A DNA stretch of 60,939 nt, the filler included, from Sluysia triapertura (Eukaryota): the NCBI GenBank assembly GCA_046118255.1. It is 5 parts of 5 records of this genome, joined end to end, with 100 filler letters (N's around TTAATTAATTAA, not from the genome) between each part and the next. Parts side by side here need not be neighbours in the genome. Positions count along the whole stretch, not along the records: positions 14,623 to 26,273 come from JBJNIA010182457.1; 4 more parts are not named here. One strand, written 5' to 3'. Below are positions 704-26,373 of the stretch, in pieces. Made by a program: the position numbers and the translations under genes. Below the pieces are notes generated by a model. It saw nothing but the letters and a program-made list of their open reading frames with translations. It searched no databases and was not told the origin of the DNA. Positions within the stretch are counted from its first letter, which is position 1. Each line of letters starts with the position of its first letter.

Positions 704-1833
704 GTTAGTTGAAATATTAAAATATTTTTATTAGAAAACAAAAATTGATTTATTAGAATTTTATGACGTTTTGAAAGTGCCTTATTTATAGAAATAGTAC
801 TAAGTAGAGAAACAATGCATTAAATTAATCAGAGATATATTGAAGATACTTAAATTTTACAACATTACATTTGAGGAAATAGATTATTTATTTACATGAT
901 TGAAAATCATTCTCAAAACGATTTCTCTTTATAAACGGTTTAATTGTCTTGGTCTTTCTATATAAGCCTGCCTTCTTATAGAGACGTCTTATTTGACGAC
1001 GACGTCTATTATGACAACCCAGAAGGAAAATTTGGAGGCGGTATAACTAATGAATGTTTATTATCTTAAAATGTTTTGGGTGATTAATAACTACCTCTTG
1101 AACTTCTATATGCTGATCGTGAAGATATTGTGGAATCTTTTCTAACGCATATGTAAATTGATGCTTTCCCTTATAAAAAGTGTAAATTTCCTTTACTGGT
1201 GTTCTGCACAAAGGGCAGTTCATATATTATATAATAGTTTAGTGAAAGAGATTAATAATGCATTTAAAATGAAATTTGTGAAAAGAGGGATATGTTTTTA
1301 TGAAATGTTTATGAATGGAATGTTGGCATATTGGGCATCGATGGAAATACATTGACTGAAATAGATATCTTATTTTAAACTGATTAGTTAATGACTTGTC
1401 CAAATAAAGCAATGCAATAACATTACTTTATCAAAATGTAAATCCGAAATTAATTGTAATACATTGAAGAAAAGCATATATAAAAATGTGAATTCAGGTC
1501 ATCCGTCCTCAAAGTGTTAAGATATTTTTAATTAATGTACTAAAATCTACTTTTAACTTGAAATTTATAACTATCCAAGTAATTTTAGTGCACCTTATTA
1601 AGTGACTATTTTTATATTTATTCTATTATTACTTATTTATTCTATTTGGAACACATATTTTATTAAAATTTCAACTGAATTTTGTACCCCAAATATTTCA
1701 ACTATTTGTGCAAATTTTGTATCTGTTTTCATAACTATTGATTTTATTAACAAAGAATATTAATCGCTTAATCTTTTAACACACACTCAAGTTGTTTTGT
1801 TTTCTTTGATAAAAATTAAAATTGATTTTTTAA

Positions 1834-2017
1834 CACGTTGAATACCATGGAGTCACCGGTAACCGGCGAAGCCAAGATTATTAGAAACACAAAATTCGAG
1901 TAAATTTTTAATGCTTTTAAATTTTTTATAATATAATCGTTACTATGCAACATAAACTGAGATATTCATTTTGGCCAGACTGGCAATCCATGTAAAATTA
2001 TCGTGCCATTAAACGTG
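1834..2017. mobile_element. piggyBac-like non-autonomous element (MITE), degenerate
   Basis: TTAA (1830-1833) then CACGTTGAATACCA; the other end reads CACGTTTAATGGCA on the reverse strand and is followed by TTAG. Internal near-palindrome GTCACCGGTAAC. Confidence 0.55.
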
Positions 2018-2428
2018 TTAGATATGTACATTTCGGGAAAAATCGAATTCTAAGATTTTTAAAAATTAAAAATTTGGTATCCATTGATTTCTTCAAATAT
2101 AGATTTGATCAAACATTTATTTAGGAGAATTTTACATCCTTTTATTTAAACTGTTTAAAAACTATTAATAAAAATCCAGATGTATAATTTTACAGAATTA
2201 TGATATTATGTCTAATTGGATTTTGAAATATTCATAATTTTAAACAGTCATTATTAGACGAAATCACAAAATTTTATTAACAAGTCTTTCGAATATAAGT
2301 GAATTTCCAAATTAATTTTCAAATAAATATCAGTTTTAATTAATAAATCGTGGAATAAAGTCATTTATTATTATGCATATTTAGAAAAAAATATTAAATT
2401 TTATATAGCAATATAAATTTGTCAATTA

Positions 2429-2430
<2 letters not shown>

Positions 2431-2480
<50 letters not shown>

Positions 2481-2501
2481 GTTGTTGTTGTTGTTGTTGT
2501 T
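2431..2501. repeat. Compound microsatellite (TTA)n(GTT)n
   Basis: Directly visible. Confidence 0.95.
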
Positions 2502-2744
2502 ATAAATACTATTGCTATTGTTGAAAATAAAATATTAAATTTCAATTAAAATAATAATAATAATATTGAGAAATTTCATTCAATATCCAATTTGGAGTTT
2601 AGCCGGACTTAATTGAAAAAATAATAATAATGATAATAATGATACAATGATAACAATGGTAATAATAAAATATTAATAAAAATAATTAGTTTAAAGGACG
2701 TAAGGCCTTGTTAATAATTCTCGCACATAAATTTAGTATAAAAT

Positions 2745-3310
2745 AAATTTAATTAGCGTATAAATTTAAAAACTGAATTTAACTTTACTTTTTTCTAAAA
2801 TATTTTCAGTAATTTGACATTCTCTGGTAGTACTGGTTGGATATTTTTGAAACATGAACGGTATACAACCTATCACTTAGCTCTTATTATCACTGTGGAT
2901 TATGTATAGATTATTATTATTTTTTATTGTTCCTAAAAGATATTCAGGACTTCCTTAAATTATTGTGATGATTTTGAATTATAGTCTTGCTTTTATTGGC
3001 AACCAATGTAATTCTTTAAGATAAGATGTTATGTTAGATCTTCTTCCCACGTGGAGAATTAATCTTGCTGCTTGATTAATTATTAATTGTAATTTTTTCA
3101 CTTTTCTACATGAAATTGAGTACAATAAACCATTGTTAAAATCTATGTTGTTAGTTATCAATGAATGAACAATAAGTTTAGCTGTTTCTTTATTAATAAA
3201 TTTTCGAATATGTCATATTTTATTTAATTGATATTGATACACTTTTTAACAATACAATTAATATTTTCTTCTCACTTGGACAATCAAAATTTATTTCGAC
3301 CAATAAGTTT
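2745..3310 (-). mobile_element. L2/CR1-clade LINE ORF2 3' fragment
   Basis: ORF 2979-3161 (ITNNIDFNNGLLY...LQLIINQAARLI...ITSYLKELHWLPIKARL) is the typical post-RT C-terminal segment of L2/Crack-like LINEs. Inverted copy of 11538-12070. Confidence 0.88.
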
Positions 3311-3989
3311 TTGAATATTATATTATAATACTTTTTCTTTATATTTTAACATATATGATTTATCTATGATTTTAATATTTATATTTTTTATATTTTAATT
3401 AACTTCTTGCTTATTCATATACATTTTTATTGGTTATGTGTTTTTCACTTCTATTTTACTGAATTCGTTGTTTGCTTCCTACAATTGGCTAATTACTTTT
3501 TTTAAGACAAGTCTATTTTTTGGGATCTAAAAGCTATTACCTTTCAATAATTAATAAATTATTTTACATTTATAAATTTTAATTATTTAATTATTTATTT
3601 ATTTCATTGGTTTTTTGCTAATTTATGGATTTTGAGTTATTTATTGAGCGAACCAATATATTATCCATATCTGAAACAAATCCAAGTATTTATCGATAAA
3701 AGACTTTTTCAGATATTCTATCTACCAATAATATTCTCTCCAACTGTAATACGATTATTTATTTATTAATTATTAATATAATGGGAAAAATTAATAATAA
3801 TTATAATAATAAGGAATATTTTAGTTTCTAATTATAATCAATAAAAGTAATCAATAAAAAAAATCGATAATGAACAAATTTATTTTTCAAAGTAGTATTG
3901 ACATATAAAAAAGTTTAATTTATTTAAGTAATTTTTAATTTTTGAAAAAATATTATTATTCAAATTATGTATTTTTTGATATATTTAAA

Positions 3990-17437: not shown

Positions 17438-17792
17438 ATATTTGCGTTTTGACGATGTTTTCCTTGGAATAGTGCTTCACAAATTATTGATTGTACCTAT
17501 ACATCTTGCCGGAGTGTTTTCTTTTTCACGTGTAAACGAAAAATCAGTCAGTTATCACCAAATGATATCAAGTCACGGCTTCAAATCACCATCTGATATT
17601 ATGAAAACCTGGCTCGAATTACACTGCTCAGATTATTGTCTCAGTACTCCCGATTTACAGATGATGTATCCAGTACATAAAATATTATATGAAAAATCAG
17701 CAATGATAACTAGTGATGATATTTTAGATAATGATGAATATGAACAATTAAACAACATTACTGCATTTACAAATGGTGCATCCAGTTCATAA
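17438..17792 (+). CDS. Brainiac-like beta-1,3-glycosyltransferase (GT31), terminal exon
   Basis: TTTCAG acceptor ending at 17437; YLRFDDVFLGIVLHKL...MISSHGFKSPSDIMKTW matches the brainiac/B3GALT C-terminal motifs RFDDVYLGIV and IASH.F..P......W. Confidence 0.85.
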
Positions 17793-18452: not shown

Positions 18453-18678
18453 ATGAGGTTGTATAATTTAACATTGCAAAAGAGCACTGGAATAATTAAA
18501 GCTGTGCATGGACATTTTTCGGGCACCAAACAACAAGAAATAGCAGTAGCAAAAGTGAAAACAATAGAATTATTACGAACTGATCAAAGTTCTGGAAAAG
18601 TTCAAACATTAATCTCAACAGAAGTTTTTGGTATTATTAGAGACATTTATGCATTTCATTTAACTGGTAGTACTAAAG
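18453..18678 (+). CDS. SF3B3: Splicing factor 3B subunit 3, coding exon 1
   Basis: MRLYNLTLQKSTGI...FSGTKQQEI...LTGSTK matches the SF3B3 N-terminus; phase-1 donor GTTTGT at 18679. Confidence 0.97.
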
Positions 18679-18716
18679 GTTTGTTTTACCAATTTTTTTA
18701 TAAAATATGACTCTAG

Positions 18717-19994
18717 ATTTGTTGGTTGTTTCTAGTGATAGTGGGCGTATTGTTATTATGGAATATATGCCATCAAAAAATACTTTTGTTAAATTACAAC
18801 AAGAAACTTATGGTAAGAGTAGTTGTCGTCGTATAATACCGGGGCAATATTTGGCTATGGATCCACAGGGTCGAGCCATTATGATTAGTGCAATTGAAAA
18901 ACAAAAAATGGTTTATGTTCTTAATCGTGATTCAGATGCTAATTTAACAATTTCTTCCCCATTGGAAGCATTTACTTCATGCAATTTATCCTTTAATACC
19001 GTTGGAATCGATGTTGGATTTGAAAACCCATTGTTTGCCGTTATTGAGATGGATTATTCTGATGCCGATGCTGATATAACCGGAAAAGCAGCTGAGGAAG
19101 TTCGCAAACATTTGACTTATTATGAATTAGATTTGGGATTAAATAATGTAGTGAGAAAATATACCGAAAAATTAGAAGAGAATGCTAATTTTCTTATATC
19201 TGTACCAGGTGGAAAAGAAGGTCCATCGGGAATTATTATTTGCGCAGAAAACTATATAACTTATAAAAATTTTGGTGATCAACCTGATATTCGCTGTCCA
19301 ATACCACGCCGTAGAAATGATTTAGATGATCCTGATCGTGGAATGATGTTTGTTTGTAGTGCAACCCATACAACAAAGAAAAAAATGTTTTTCTTTTTAG
19401 CTCAAACAGAACAAGGAGATATATTCAAAATTACGTTAGAAGTTGATAATGAAATGGTTCGAGAAATGAGGTTAAAATATTTTGATACAGTACCTGTTGC
19501 TGTCAGTTTGTGTGTTCTTAAAACTGGATTTTTATTTGTAGCTTCTGAATTCGGAAATCATTATTTATATCAGATTACTAATTTGGGTGATAATGATGAT
19601 GAACCTGAATTTTCAAGCAGTATGCCGTTAGATGATGGTGATACGTTTTATTTTGCTCCTAGAGAATTGAAGAATTTGACATTAATTGATGAAATAAATA
19701 GTTTTGCACCTATTACAAGCTGTCAAGTTGCTGATTTAATGAATGAAGATACTCCTCAGTTAGTAGTTGCTTGTGGTCGTAGTTCCAGATCAACATTAAG
19801 ATTATTATCACATGGATTGGAAGTTAGTGTGATGGCAAAATCAGATTTACCCGGTCACCCTAACGCAGTATGGACTGTTAAAAGAACTGCAGATGAAGAA
19901 TATGATTCATATATTGTTGTTTCTTTCGCCAATGCTACCTTAGTTTTGTCAATTGGTGAAACTGTTGAAGAAGTAACTGATAGTGGCTTTTTGG
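18717..19994 (+). CDS. SF3B3: SF3B3 coding exon 2
   Basis: Follows a 38-nt intron (18679-18716). SDSGRIV, YELDLGLN.VVRKY, PIPRRRNDLDDP, GETVEEVTDSGFL; phase-1 donor GTTAGA at 19995. Confidence 0.98.
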
Positions 19995-21876
19995 GTTAGA
20001 TTTAATTTTATATTTAATTTATGGTTGCATTTTCGAACTTTAAAAGACAATTATTTTTGTAAATATTTTCGTACGTCATTTGAGTGAAACTTAGTTTCAA
20101 TTTAATGACAATTTTTTATTGAAATATTGATTACATTGTTAAAAATTTGGTATCAAAGCGTACAAAGTAATTTTGAATTATTACGCAATCTCTTACAAGG
20201 TGCTAAATATACTTACAAATTCATAAAGCAATTATACATGTGTCTAGAGATGTTATGCTACTTGGCATTCTGCTATTTTTTTAGCTGTTAATTAAAAATA
20301 ACTTTAGCAGACATTGCTATCACAATCGCGAAATAACAGCTATTAAATAACAGAGACGTGTTGAAAAAAATTAAAAAGCTTGTGCACGCCTGAACTAATG
20401 TACAGCATATGTCTGTTCTGGATACAATGAGTCTAGTGAAGTTTTTATCATTCCATTCATATGATCTTAAATTTAACATGAAAACGCAAAAGAAATTCAT
20501 TTGCAGAACTCAGGCTGTATAAATCAAAACCCTTGCAACGTTGTTTAAAGCTCTTGTATATCAAGCTTAATGCAAATTTTTATTTAACTATCATTGATCC
20601 AACAATTTGACGAAAATTAATGTATAAGATTGTACTTATACGTTACACAAATAAAAGTGATGGTCTTTTCCCTAAGGTAAATTTTTTAAGCATTTTATTA
20701 AAATAATTTTAAAAAAATTTTTACAAACTTAATAAATCTAAGAAAATTGGACTGGAGAAAGAAAAATGATAACATTACTGATGAATTAAAATTGACTAAC
20801 AAAAGATCTGACTAACATTAGTGATTGTTAAACAATAAAATCTAAAATTTTGCCAAAACTTCATAACCTTAAAATATTAAATCATAACTTTACAAGAATA
20901 ACAGTAGTATAACGAAACAAATACATTCTAACTCATTAACATATATTTCCTATCATTATCACTTACCTCAACAGTTGCATTTCAAAACTTCTCAACAATA
21001 CAAAAAGCAGCAAAACTATTAAACATTATCACACCACAAACAATATAATAATTAATCAATGTTCACATCGGTTAAAACTTTCTGAAATTACTTCGAACTT
21101 AACTATTTCATATTTTAATGTAGTTATGTTTTGGTAATATAATTTCGAAACCCAAAATTAGAATTAGCCATTTAACTACAATATTTTATTTCTGCTTTTT
21201 GTATTTTTTAAATCTTAATTAGAACAAAATAAAGCTTGCGAGAAATGGGTAACTACGGAGCAAGTGTAGTGAGCACAAAATTAAAGCACTCTAGTCATCA
21301 ATTTTAGGTAAACATCAACTCGGGCTAACATTTATAAATAAAATCCTAAACAAGCTTCAATGCAGTCTAACACAATGTGATGGCCAACTTCGCACAAAAT
21401 TTTAATGCACCACAATACACTATAGATTATACTTTTACAACATCTAAACCATTCATAACACCAAAAATCATTAAATTTGCATTTTAAATCTCAAAGTAAT
21501 TTAAACGGAATTTCTTTTTGCATCTCCAACTTCATTAATTTTCTATAATAACTCTATTTCATATTTCTTTTACATGAATATAACGTACAATTTTCTTTTA
21601 GCAAACATTTTATAGCGTATCTGAACAAGCCTTTTATATTTTCAAGAATTTTTAAGAAATGTTTAAGTAAAAGAAAAAATGAAGGAAATGTATGCATTTT
21701 TGTTTTTGTATTAATGTTTATTATTATTATTACCACTATCTATCATACTGTCAGTTGTGACAGTTTTTAATTAATAGATTTATTATATCGGTAAAATAAA
21801 TTGATTGGCATTTGCATTGTTATCACGGCATAATTGTTTGATTGTTGAAATCCTTTTAACTTATAATCTATCTTTC

Positions 21877-21941
<65 letters not shown>
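21877..21941. repeat. (TAT)n microsatellite in SF3B3 intron
   Basis: Directly visible. Confidence 0.95.
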
Positions 21942-21942
<1 letters not shown>

Positions 21943-22031
21943 GTTTTTATAGTTATTATATTTTGTTACCAATGTTTGATTTATAAAGCACAGTTTGTAC
22001 ATCAAATGTAAGATAAAATGAAATCATTTAG

Positions 22032-22267
22032 GTACTACATCAACTCTAATGTGCGGTCAGCTTGGGGAAGATGCGTTAGTTCAAGTTTATCCAGATGGAA
22101 TTCGACATATTCGTCCAGATAGACGTGTACACGTGTGGCGTGCTCCTGTCAAAAAATCGATAGTTAAATGTGCATTGAATCGGCGTCAAGTAGTAATTGC
22201 ACTTAATGGCAATGAACTGGTTTATTTTGAACTAGATTCAACTTCAGGACAATTAAATGAGTTTCAA
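22032..22267 (+). CDS. SF3B3: SF3B3 coding exon 3 (gene continues beyond the contig)
   Basis: TTTAG acceptor ending at 22031; GTTSTLMCGQLGEDALVQVYPDGIRHIR...GQLNEFQ; donor GTAAAT at 22268. No ERKEM-like next exon recognised before the gap. Confidence 0.96.
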
Positions 22268-24442
22268 GTAAATATTTTGAATTTAATATTCAACAAATCT
22301 TAATTTAAATTTCATTGATTCTTTTTTTCTATTGTTATTTATTTAATATTTAATTTAATATACATCATTTGAGAACTCTTCAACATTCTTACTTTTGATT
22401 TAAGAATTTTCTTATTCTAATATTGGATTTCGTCTTTTCAGTGACATGTTTTATTGGAAATTAGAAACTAATTTCGAATTGTGACGCTCTGTTATTTTAA
22501 TCTTTATAATTTAGAACTTATTGATAAGTTAATAAATAAGTTGTAGTATTTGTAATTATTGAAAATCAGTTGGAGAGATCCAAGAAAACACTGGTGAATA
22601 ATTAATTAGTCTAAATGTTTATAAAAAGCTAAATTTACTAAGGTATGTACTAAATAGCAATTTTACAGTCTATATCAAATTTCGAGAACAATTAGTGAAT
22701 TTTAATTAACGAAACACCAATCCAGATATTTATAGAAATTAAAATCTTAACGGCATCATTGTAATGTAATTTTAACAGACTGCTGCTTGAGAAAAAATGG
22801 GGAACATTTATCATTTGGTAATAACTAACAGATATCTTCAAATGGTGTCAGTGATACTATTTAAATAATGTCACCTAAAATTGCAGAAAATTACAATATT
22901 ATTCGATGCCTTCATTTTTCGAATAAAAAAAATTTATCTTAGTACTAGGTATTTGGTAAATATTTCGATATTTTCCTTGTTGAAATTGTGGATACTTATG
23001 CCAATTTTGATCAGCCTGGATAAGAAAGACATAAGTACAGTGCCCGTTGAAAAAGTTCTTAACCCAATTGTTTGCAAATTTTACATCTGTAAAAATAATG
23101 CTTAACAATTATAATTTGCATAATATTTTGTAAAAAATCTATTTTATAATTGTTAAGTATGTTAATGTAAAATTTGTCTTGACTTCTAAATCTTTAAAAT
23201 CTTGTGCCTTGTCTCTTTAATTTTATTTTATTAAGTCTTTATCAAATTTAACTATGGACACTACGTTATACTCTTGTTCCTTACTATTAATTCAAATTTC
23301 TTTGTAAAATTTATACTTATTCTGAGCTTCTCAATTAATATTATCACTTTATATTAAACTTAGCTGGAGGTATGAATCAGTATACTCGTCCTTGCTGTTC
23401 AGGATAGAAGTGCTTAATAATTTATACGATTAAGTTTTAATCAATATTCAACTGTAATATAGATATTTAAATTTTAATTCAATAATAATTGTTTGGTTCT
23501 GTGTTTATTATTACAACTTATTATTATGTCTTCACTGATACACCTTACATATATTTCTTATTTCCTTTTTAGGGGCGCACTCTCAATTTTAGTCGAGATA
23601 AGAATAAAAGAAAAAAGACTAAATTGTTTATTTATAAATTATTACAAATAAAATTATTAAATAAATGTAAAACGCAAAATTTTGTAAAATTAATTTTAAA
23701 TTGAATGAAATAAAATGCAAGACAATCAATACCATTTACTTACAGTAACTGGAATAATTGGCCGGATAAACGACTTAAATCTTCGAAATTCACAATTTTA
23801 ATCTTGTAATCTGTGTTTTGTAAGTAAGAGTCATTTTTATAATAATTCCAAATCGATTGAATCAATTAAATTAAACTAATACAGTAAAAAATAAATGCAT
23901 TGTACATTAACAATAATAATTAAATCAATTATTTCATATACATATTGGCAGTCATTTAATTAATACAATATGTGTAGTAATAATAATTAAATCAAATATG
24001 TAATTAAATACAGTAATACAATAATAAAATCAATAATATAGTAATAATAATAATAATAAAATCAATAACGTGATAATAATAATAATAGTAATATTATCAA
24101 TAAATGATGCTGATTGCCCTTAATTAAAAATAATTTTACTTTTACAATGAATGAGAAATATTGTTACAGATTATTATGTAAATTTAAATGAATATTGTTA
24201 TAATTTAAATGATGTTATGCTTATACCTGCCTACATAATCATAAATCAAAAAAATTAACGTATACAAAAGTGGTTGATTTTAAAATTTAATAATTTATGT
24301 CCTAGGATATTCAACTTCAAAATTGGTCTAAAAATAATGCACTTAAATTACAAATAAATGTGCTATTGCATAAATTTGCAGAACCGCAAAACTTGTAAAT
24401 GTTACTTATTGTCAAAGGGATACTAAGAAGTTTTTATAAAAC

Positions 24443-24474
24443 AGGCGTGGGTTCAAATCTCACTCCTGACACCA
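24443..24474 (+). pseudogene. tRNA-Leu 3' fragment with encoded CCA (PBS-like on the minus strand)
   Basis: AGGCGTGGGTTCAAATCTCACTCCTGACA-CCA matches the T-arm and acceptor 3' strand of eukaryotic tRNA-Leu(CAG/CAA). No intact 5' half. Confidence 0.75.
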
Positions 24475-25219
24475 ATGTGTGGGGGGCAAAAAATATTTTA
24501 GTTTATGAAAGATAAAATTATTTTTATTATAAATGATTCGAATTAAACAATCTATAATTAAACAAAAACAGTTTAAACATATTTCTATTATATTTAACAA
24601 AATAGGTGTAAGGTGTGGAATAATAGAGAAAATGTATAATATAATTGCGTAAGAATTTCAACTTTGTTAGCTGGATTGATTGTCAAAATTGTTGTACAAT
24701 TTCAAACGCACCTAACCCTAACACTTTGAGTGCCACAGAAAATTTTCAGAAAGCCCTCATAAGGTGACAAATATTTTTTTCAAGTTCATATTTTGAGTTT
24801 CAGGTCAAAATTTTACGTTAACTCATTAAAACAACATAAATATTCGAGATAATAAATTGTTTACCTGCAATTTTTGTTGATTTAGTTCTTGCATTAAATG
24901 TTAGGTTTCACATAAGTGTAGAGATCCAAGAATACAGACAAAATCTCACAGTTTAATATGCTTTGTATTTAATTGATGAGAATCAACTTCATCTGAAACT
25001 TTTTTGGAACATGCTTAATCTTTTTGTAAATAACTTCAAGATGGACATATACTTTACTATTCTATACATGTACTGTCAGTTAACAATTATTTAAAATTTT
25101 TAAAGTAAAAAATTGATTAGAATTGAACAACGTGGGGTTGTACAAAATATCGGACTCCCACTTTCTTAACTAAGAATGAACAAAAATTAAAAAAAATCTT
25201 TTATAATTTCTTTTTCAAG

Positions 25220-26273
25220 TTACCTACGTATGATGAAATTGAACACCAACTTGATTGTCTTGGCAAACCGTATTCGGTACAGTAACCATATGCGTACTAA
25301 AAGTATTATAGAGGTACTATTGGTATTTAAAAATTGGTTACTCGTCTCGACGCTGTGAGACAAACAATTAATATATTTTAAAAACTTAGGAAAACTCTTC
25401 GTGTTTACTTCGGTTTTAAATGTGTTTATTATGACCAGTTTGTCATTTAAAAATCTTACTTTAGCTTGGTCGACCTGCGACTTAGTCGTGACGACATTGA
25501 AGTAACTTTTGTAAGGGGCCTTATGAAACTCTTGATCTTCAATTAATTTAAATTGTTTGTTATCTATTTTATTGATAAAACGACCTATATGTAGCATTGT
25601 CTTGCATGATTTATGATTGAACAACAAATTACAAAAATAAGGTAGGAAATACAAAACATTTATTAAAATTTTAAAGTTTAGTAAATAACGAGGTTGGTGA
25701 TACGCATTGTGGTTCAGCTGCACTTCTGTAGACATAGATCCCGGTCTGAAAGAATTTGACCTGTAAATAAAGTAATGAAAGATATAATATATAATATAAT
25801 TGAAGTCAAAAGTTAAATTAATAAGATTAAACTTGTTACCTCGTATGATGTTGCTTAGGTGGATCGTATCAGTTTTACTGTATCTATCCCAATTGATGTT
25901 GCTCGTACGCCGTATACTAATTGTGTCATATTTATTCTGCCTTACATCGTCAGAGTAAGTCGCTTCTATTGCGTAGTACCTGCTTCGTTTTATTCTATTT
26001 ATATAATTCACATCGGTCTTATCTCCTTTACTATCTTTTATACTAAATGAGCGTATTGTATGGATCTCATCATCTTTACTCTGCTTCATTCTATGGATAT
26101 TAATTACATGGATCATGTCGCCTCTGCTTCGCTTTGCTGTATTTACATAATTTACCTCGATTACATCTTCTTTACTATCTTTTATACTAAATGAGTGTAT
26201 TGTATGGATCTCATCATCTTTACTCTGCTTCATTCTATGGATATTAATTACATGGATCATGTCGCCTCTGCTT
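25220..26273 (-). CDS. Unknown repeat-containing protein, 5'-open ORF antisense to SF3B3
   Basis: At least 346 stop-free codons in very AT-rich DNA, open up to the gap. N-terminal part has 16-aa periodicity; hydrophobic segments follow. Confidence 0.55.
25980..26273. repeat. 144-bp tandem repeat made of three diverged 48-bp monomers
   Basis: 26026-26129 equals 26170-26273 except for one base; the contig breaks inside the array. Confidence 0.93.
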
Positions 26274-26373
26274 NNNNNNNNNNNNNNNNNNNNNNNNNNN
26301 NNNNNNNNNNNNNNNNNTTAATTAATTAANNNNNNNNNNNNNNNNNNNNNNNNNNNNNNNNNNNNNNNNNNNN
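26274..26373. other. Artificial contig spacer
   Basis: N44-TTAATTAATTAA-N44. Confidence 0.99.

What the first reader, a model, noticed from the sequence alone, without database searches (positions are those of the whole stretch)
25220..26273. Long antisense ORF inside an SF3B3 intron, built from a 16-aa higher-order repeat
This is the longest ORF here not explained by a known gene, and it is open to the gap. Monomers align: MIHVINIHRMKQSKDD / EIHTIHSFSIKDSKED / VIEVNYVNTAKRSRGD / ... / KTDVNYINRIKRSRYY / AIEATYSDDVRQNKYD / TISIRRTSNINWDRYS. The units are highly diverged yet stop-free and indel-free, which points to selection on protein. The alternating pattern suggests a beta-solenoid. The trimer (48 aa) was recently re-duplicated. 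Hydrophobic stretches follow, and the ORF end (CGTAG|GTAACT) could be a splice donor. Candidate novel nested gene or cargo of an unknown element.
Basis: partly seen in the sequence, partly recalled or inferred. Interest (0 to 1): 0.72.

Follow-up and report, generated by a model that had tools for sequence, protein, structure and literature searches.

The report
Orphan ORF inside a high-copy repeat
The long antisense reading frame in the SF3B3 intron is real, but it belongs to a repeat family present in tens to over a hundred copies, most likely an unclassified mobile element with an orphan coding region, and not to a unique nested gene.

Summary
On the minus strand, 25220-26273 is stop-free for 351 codons and open to the N gap. 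The other two frames of that strand have 34 and 46 stops. The 209-codon part outside the array beats all 5000 dinucleotide shuffles. The 48-nt (16-aa) units stay in register for nine units, and a 144-nt block is duplicated.

The interpretation needs changing. Contigs of the likely source run show single-copy DNA (depth 23) up to about 25305. From about 25306 to the gap, 547 contig pieces at 80-100% identity sum to depth 840-3500. The ORF therefore lies in a high-copy, apparently dispersed repeat family. Its last 28 codons, stop and proposed splice donor lie outside the repeat, in unique intron DNA.

The protein has no relative in 1.84 billion representatives, Pfam, PDB, the ESM Atlas or the metagenome scans. 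Codon-position GC (0.32/0.28/0.37) is unlike the host gene (0.46/0.37/0.19). This copy's differences from the family look neutral: 10 synonymous, 28 replacement, 0 stop. Diverged family contigs show no net frameshift.

Best reading: a decaying copy of an unclassified mobile or repetitive element that carries, or recently carried, an orphan coding region. Expression could not be tested. Interest is modest.

The parts
25220..26273 (-). Stop-free reading frame of 351 codons, open to the N gap. The stop TAA is at 25220-25222.
25829..26260 (-). Array of nine in-register 48-nt (16-aa) units. Units 0-5 are clear, units 6 and 8 are significant, and unit 7 is degenerate.
25980..26267 (.). 144-nt block present twice, 91% identical. 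The divergence is concentrated in the third 48-nt unit.
25306..26273 (.). Segment belonging to a high-copy repeat family. Summed contig depth is 840-3500 against 23.1 for the adjoining single-copy contig; 547 contig pieces at 80-100% identity were laid on the whole 24150-26273 stretch, most of them on this segment. The left boundary is at about 25306-25318.
25650..25848 (.). Sub-block of the repeat with the highest depth outside the array and its own recurrent alignment ends. One contig of depth 816 continues past 25848 into sequence unlike the array.
   Evidence: tables 2, 7, 8
25220..25305 (-). Last 28 codons, the stop and the proposed splice donor of the ORF. They lie in single-copy intron DNA outside the repeat.
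   Evidence: X1 contig 24584-25335, exact match, depth 23.1
18453..22303 (+). Host gene SF3B3. Exons lie at about 18453-18678, 18717-19996 and 22049-22290. No further exon was seen before the gap.

Best explanation
The ORF is the visible part of a coding region, or a recently coding one, carried by an unclassified multi-copy interspersed repeat. This is most likely a transposable element or a composite derived from one. One copy lies antisense in an SF3B3 intron. The element has an internal 48-nt tandem array that reads as 16-aa units, followed by about 180 codons rich in hydrophobic residues and AT-rich codons. The open frame is a property of the family, not of this locus. This copy looks inert: it carries private replacement changes, and its frame runs out of the element at about 25306 and ends by chance 28 codons later in unique intron DNA. 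The assembly gap at 26274 probably exists because the repeat could not be assembled through. Shown here: the open frame is beyond chance; the sequence is multi-copy; there is a sharp boundary to single-copy DNA; there are no detectable relatives; codon usage is not host-like. Inferred: mobility, the class of element, and that the family's master copy is translated.
For: Frame: 0 stops in 351 codons against 34 and 46 in the sister frames. The non-array part, 209 codons, exceeds all 5000 shuffles. Copy number: in run X1 an exact contig at 24584-25335 has depth 23.1. From 25286 onward the summed depth is 840-3500. 547 contig pieces were laid on the 24150-26273 stretch, in identity bands 77/115/186/169 (99+, 95-99, 90-95, under 90%), and single contigs reach depth 805-816. 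Boundary: alignments in three other runs start at 25306, 25307, 25317 and 25318, and those records continue into unlike sequence (table 8). Many distinct loose ends suggest dispersed copies (table 7). Frame kept among diverged copies: the listed contigs in the ORF part carry about 356 substitutions. Examples are 42 in 232 nt, 46 in 383 nt and 32 in 193 nt. Their only gaps are one 3-nt deletion and +1/-1 pairs 2-3 nt apart. A contig of the neighbouring repeat has 14 gap letters for 18 substitutions. The array, block B and block A all share one frame. Composition: the region has GC 0.31-0.32, against 0.19-0.27 in the surrounding intron.
Against: No transposase, reverse transcriptase, integrase or any other domain was found in the visible 350 aa. 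No termini, target-site duplication or second end could be examined. An ORF that is open through an element's end is unusual for known TE classes. Depth does not rise towards the 25306 end as it would for 5'-truncated LINEs. The substitution pattern is neutral (10 synonymous, 28 replacement, 0 stop). GC3 exceeds GC1 and GC2. ESM recognition is low (1309) and AlphaFold2 pLDDT is 35, so no positive sign of a folded, conserved protein exists. The tool warns that summed contig depth is not a copy number, and only 31 of 614 contig pieces were listed.
Confidence: 0.62

Rival explanations
1. It is a lineage-specific, rapidly evolving multigene family amplified by segmental or tandem duplication, not by transposition. 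This locus would be one member or a pseudogene. The product would be a repeat protein with beta-strand/loop 16-aa units and hydrophobic C-terminal helices.
For: The frame is kept among copies 12-18% diverged, while replacements are frequent. The units alternate hydrophobic and polar residues. AlphaFold2 draws strands in the units and long helices at 148-171, 194-218 and 221-243, though at very low confidence.
Against: The homology ends inside the ORF, 28 codons before its stop. The copy sits antisense in the intron of an essential gene, next to another high-copy repeat. There are tens to more than a hundred copies with a broad identity spectrum and many different junctions. Codon usage is not host-like. 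No protein of the family appears in 1.84 billion representatives.
Confidence: 0.12
2. It is a non-coding composite repeat (satellite plus flanking repeat) that never encoded a protein, and the open frame has no meaning.
For: Substitutions are neutral and spread evenly over codon positions. GC3 is higher than GC1 and GC2. No homologues were found. ESM recognition is at the level of shuffled sequences. A tandem array multiplies whatever open frame its unit happens to have.
Against: There are 351 codons, 209 of them outside the array, with no stop in 31% GC DNA, while the sister frames carry a stop every 8-10 codons. No shuffle out of 5000 reaches the non-array part alone. The distal units are diverged to 31-52% identity yet remain open and in register. 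All indels seen in family contigs preserve the frame.
Confidence: 0.1
3. One reading: a unique, novel nested gene antisense in the SF3B3 intron, under purifying selection and spliced onward from the donor at the ORF end.
For: The ORF is long, and AG|GTAAC overlaps the stop.
Against: All but the last 28 codons of the visible ORF are high-copy. No purifying selection is seen. Stops are dense downstream in all minus frames. The donor lies in the unique flank, so it cannot be a feature of the family.
Confidence: 0.03

Closest known systems
Transposable elements with internal tandem arrays, such as the foldback transposon Tetris of Drosophila virilis (PMC4079207) and the composite MITE DTC84 of the clam Donax trunculus (PMC3879986)
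   Same: A dispersed, high-copy element holds a short internal array of tandem units flanked by non-repetitive element sequence. Such arrays can seed satellites and break assemblies.
   Different: DTC84 is a nonautonomous MITE, and neither source links its tandem array to a reading frame. Here one reading frame runs through the array and about 180 further codons. Termini and inverted repeats could not be examined because the other end lies in the gap.
Accessory or ORF1-type proteins of retroelements and large DNA transposons (own knowledge: these are poorly conserved and often orphan)
   Same: The ORF is multi-copy, its sense strand is A-rich (A 0.38), it has no detectable homologues, and individual copies decay neutrally.
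   Different: No RT, endonuclease, integrase or transposase lies next to it. The repeat ends at about 25306 where a downstream pol or ORF2 would be expected. The depth profile is not that of 5'-truncated LINEs.
Macrosatellite-borne ORFs such as D4Z4/DUX4 (own knowledge)
   Same: An ORF embedded in repeated DNA that is present in many copies.
   Different: In those, the kb-sized tandem unit holds a whole homeobox gene with clear homologues. Here the tandem unit is 48 nt inside the ORF, and the copies appear dispersed with differing flanks.
Beta-solenoid repeat proteins with 16-residue units in 48-residue higher order, such as bacterial ice-nucleation proteins (own knowledge)
   Same: A 16-aa unit, a 48-aa higher-order period and alternating residues typical of beta strands.
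   Different: There is no sequence similarity (0 hits). No confident fold was predicted. Only about nine units are present and the distal ones are degenerate.

Membership tests
Interspersed repeat / transposable element | Many copies in the genome with a spectrum of divergence | tested here: met
   547 contig pieces at 80-100% identity on the 24150-26273 stretch. Summed depth over 25306-26273 is 840-3500 against 23.1 for single-copy DNA, and single collapsed contigs reach depth 805-816.
Interspersed repeat / transposable element | Defined termini with differing flanks and target-site duplications | tested here: inconclusive
   One recurrent boundary at 25306-25318 adjoins unique DNA here and unlike sequence in other contigs. 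The other end is in the gap. No TIR, LTR or Helitron hallmark is recognisable at the visible end.
Interspersed repeat / transposable element | Encodes a recognisable transposition enzyme (RT, transposase, integrase, Rep/helicase) | tested here: not met
   No Pfam family reaches its cut-off in the 350 aa or in either half. phmmer against 1.84 billion representatives gave 0 hits. Only part of the element is visible.
Satellite DNA | Head-to-tail tandem arrangement of the whole repeated sequence | tested here: not met
   Only 25829-26273 is tandem (48/144 nt). The stretch 25306-25828 is high-copy but not tandem within the window.
Satellite DNA | Non-coding | tested here: inconclusive
   The frame is open far beyond chance, but the substitution pattern is neutral and no expression data exist.
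Single-copy nested protein-coding gene | Unique locus | tested here: not met
Single-copy nested protein-coding gene | Purifying selection and host-like codon usage | tested here: not met
   Differences split 10 synonymous, 28 replacement and 0 stop, against a neutral expectation of 25/72/3%. GC1/2/3 is 0.32/0.28/0.37 against 0.46/0.37/0.19 in the SF3B3 exon.
Single-copy nested protein-coding gene | Minus-strand transcript | not testable with these tools
   No RNA run holds the stretch, and all four runs are contigs of unrecorded kind.
Beta-solenoid repeat protein | Confident solenoid fold, or homology to a known solenoid family | tested here: inconclusive
   Single-sequence AlphaFold2 gave mean pLDDT 35 and pTM 0.20. 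There is no PDB or Pfam relative.

The most novel reading that the evidence does not exclude
The family encodes a genuinely new, fast-evolving protein: 16-aa strand/loop repeats followed by membrane-like helices. It is carried by a new kind of mobile element, or amplified as a surface or secreted multigene family. Selection keeps the frame open but lets residues change, as under diversifying selection.
Probability: 0.12. Interest if true: 0.55.

Novelty: new member of a known kind. Interest (0 to 1): 0.3.

Why it matters
The result matters mainly as a correction. A striking 350-codon antisense ORF in the intron of an essential splicing gene would be an exciting orphan nested gene if it were unique. 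The read evidence shows instead that it is one copy of an abundant repeat. Orphan ORFs in unclassified repeats are common in poorly studied, AT-rich animal genomes. Some interest remains: the family keeps a long frame open across copies 12-18% diverged, yet has no relative among 1.84 billion protein representatives. It could be an uncharacterised element-borne protein, and it would be worth classifying once full-length copies are available.

Tried and rejected
**Splicing of an intron-like stretch inside the ORF.** A GT at 25839 and an AG at 25761 or 25746 look like splice sites. The intron would be 79 or 94 nt. Either would shift the frame into a TGA within about 15 codons (read), so the continuous frame is the simpler reading.

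**Other genetic codes.** No other frame becomes open when TGA alone, or TAA and TAG, are read through.

**Antisense shadow of a plus-strand gene.** The plus-strand frames have 17-34 stops, and their translations resemble nothing.

**Further SF3B3 exons in 22303-26273.** None was seen.

**Other copies within the piece.** blastn and tblastn found only AT-rich noise.

**RNA families and tRNAs.** Nothing was found.

**Relatives elsewhere.**
- Word search: 0 hits.
- Full HMMER search: 0 hits.
- ESM Atlas: no usable hit.
- PDB: nothing below E 2.5.
- Exact look-up: not in the collection.
- DNA pattern in viral and metagenome contigs: 0 hits.
- Protein-guided metagenome scan: 0 hits.

**Fold search.** It was not run, because a model with pLDDT 35 gives meaningless matches.

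**Organism.** It was not identified, because run and organism names were coded.

Full report
**Observation.** On the minus strand the frame ending with TAA at 25220-25222 has no stop up to the N gap at 26273, a run of 351 codons. The first ATG (26260) lies inside a repeat unit, so the frame is cut by the gap and does not start there. Within the same 1050 nt, the two other minus frames carry 34 and 46 stops, and the plus frames carry 17, 18 and 34. The piece is very AT-rich: GC is 0.19-0.27 in intron DNA, and 0.31-0.32 in both the ORF region and the exons. Chance therefore cannot give such a frame. The 209 codons outside the tandem array alone exceed every one of 5000 dinucleotide-preserving shuffles, whose mean was 62 and maximum 158.

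**The array.** TRF and the repeat finder confirm a 144-nt block present twice at 91% identity and a 48-nt period. Laid out in register, units 0-5 are clearly related: 0 equals 3, 1 vs 4 is 96%, and 2 vs 5 is 69%. Units 6-8 are 31-52% identical to the others. A weight matrix built from the clear units ranks units 6 and 8 first and second among about 700 downstream positions, both exactly in register, while unit 7 is weak.

**Context.** The plus strand carries SF3B3. I searched the exons separately by reference and did not join them into a spliced model. Exon 18707-19996 matches human SF3B3 residues 74-501 at E 6.7e-223. The three exons hit the RSE1/DDB1/CPSF1 first and second beta-propeller families. 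The last exon in the piece reaches only position 144 of 327 in the second propeller, and no further exon is seen before the gap. The ORF therefore very probably lies in an intron, which is an inference. The first intron is only 38 nt.

**The decisive result: the sequence is multi-copy.** The one read-laying run put the contigs of four public runs on 24150-26273 at 80% likeness or more. Run X1 holds 60% of the sampled words. In X1, an exact 752-nt contig covers 24584-25335 at depth 23.1, which is the single-copy level. From bin 25286 onward the summed depth jumps to 840-3500. Across the whole stretch 547 contig pieces were laid, in identity bands 77/115/186/169 (99+, 95-99, 90-95, under 90%), most of them on the ORF part. 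Individual collapsed contigs reach depth 805-816.

The tool warns that summed depth is not a copy number. I read it only as 'tens to more than a hundred copies'.

Alignments in the three other runs begin at 25306, 25307, 25317 and 25318, and those records continue into unlike sequence. This marks a recurrent repeat boundary. Many different loose ends point to dispersed copies with varying neighbours. One abundant variant (depth 816) leaves the window's sequence at 25848, exactly where the array starts. Block 25650-25848 has its own recurrent ends, so the family is structurally mosaic.

The last 28 codons of the ORF, its stop and the proposed AG|GTAAC donor all lie in the single-copy flank. The frame simply runs out of the repeat and meets a stop, which has roughly a 10% chance of taking 28 or more codons at the local stop density. 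Downstream, every minus frame is dense with stops.

**Is it coding?**

Evidence for:
- The length of the frame.
- One frame is shared by the array and both non-array blocks.
- The listed family contigs in the ORF part carry about 356 substitutions. Examples are 42 in 232 nt, 46 in 383 nt and 32 in 193 nt.
- Their only gaps are a 3-nt deletion and +1/-1 pairs 2-3 nt apart. A contig of the neighbouring repeat at 24461-24606 has 14 gap letters for 18 substitutions. From general knowledge, non-coding DNA accumulates roughly one indel per 10-20 substitutions, so this suggests the frame was kept while subfamilies diverged. The caveats are that only 31 of 614 pieces are listed, the contigs share ancestry, and the aligner may clip at indels.

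Evidence against, or neutral:
- The 38 best-supported differences between this copy and the family are 10 synonymous, 28 replacement and 0 stop, spread 10/14/14 over codon positions. The neutral expectation is 25/72/3%.
- The 11 differences carried by at least 85% of the depth, which are this copy's private changes, are all replacements.
- The two 144-nt copies differ in 13 codons, 10 of them replacements.
- GC by codon position is 0.32/0.28/0.37, against 0.46/0.37/0.19 in the SF3B3 exon.
- Residues F, Y, M, I, N and K make up 45% of the product and G, A, R and P make up 12% (counts).
- ESM recognition is 1309, in the range of shuffled sequences.
- Single-sequence AlphaFold2 gives pLDDT 35.

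Neutral decay of individual copies is what one expects of a mobile-element family.

**Relatives.** None were found.
- Pfam: nothing above cut-off for the whole ORF or either half.
- Word-index search of 5.8 billion clusters: none.
- Full phmmer against 1.84 billion representatives: 0 hits at E up to 0.001.
- PDB: nothing below E 2.5.
- ESM Atlas: no usable hit.
- Exact look-up: absent.
- Viral and metagenome contigs, by DNA pattern and by protein: nothing.

No RNA run was available, so expression is untested.

**Interpretation.** The best-supported reading (about 0.6) is a copy of an unclassified interspersed repeat, most likely a transposable element or a composite derived from one. Its family sequence carries, or recently carried, a coding region with an internal 16-aa repeat array. 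The copy is inserted antisense in an SF3B3 intron and is decaying. Elements with internal tandem arrays are well known, for example Tetris (PMC4079207) and DTC84 (PMC3879986). The unusual points here are that a reading frame runs through the array and that it is open to the very end of the repeat. The class of element cannot be named. No enzyme domain is visible, the second end lies in the gap, the visible end shows no hallmark, and the depth profile is not LINE-like.

Three rival readings remain:
- An amplified lineage-specific gene family (0.12).
- A repeat that never coded (0.10), which is hard to reconcile with the frame statistics.

Noticed in passing
window 24434-24646: A second high-copy repeat, with summed contig depth 1800-5200 against 23 for single-copy DNA. 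Its left end, 24444-24475, reads like the 3' part of a tRNA (T-arm, acceptor strand and CCA). ARAGORN and Rfam call nothing there. It may be a tRNA-derived SINE-like element.
   Followed up: partly
window 17442-17792 (+): A 116-aa ORF upstream of SF3B3 with ordinary protein-like composition, perhaps the last exon of a neighbouring gene. Pfam gave nothing above cut-off.
   Followed up: partly
window 18679-18716: The first SF3B3 intron is only 38 nt (GT..AG), while later introns exceed 2 and 4 kb. The host is a very AT-rich animal, with GC3 0.19 in the SF3B3 exon.
   Followed up: no
window 21877-21942: A perfect (TAT)22 microsatellite inside an SF3B3 intron.
   Followed up: no
window 24294-24470 and the ORF region, runs X2-X4: Runs labelled as three other organisms hold low-depth (2-7x) pieces nearly identical to the window. 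These include single-copy intron DNA: one X3 contig covers 24294-24470 with 0 differences. The samples are the same or very close species, or contain its DNA.
   Followed up: no
window 25848: An abundant family variant (contig depth 816, also seen in run X4) leaves the window's sequence exactly at the array/non-array junction and continues with more GC-rich sequence. Many copies therefore seem to lack the 48-nt array (tables 7-8).
   Followed up: partly
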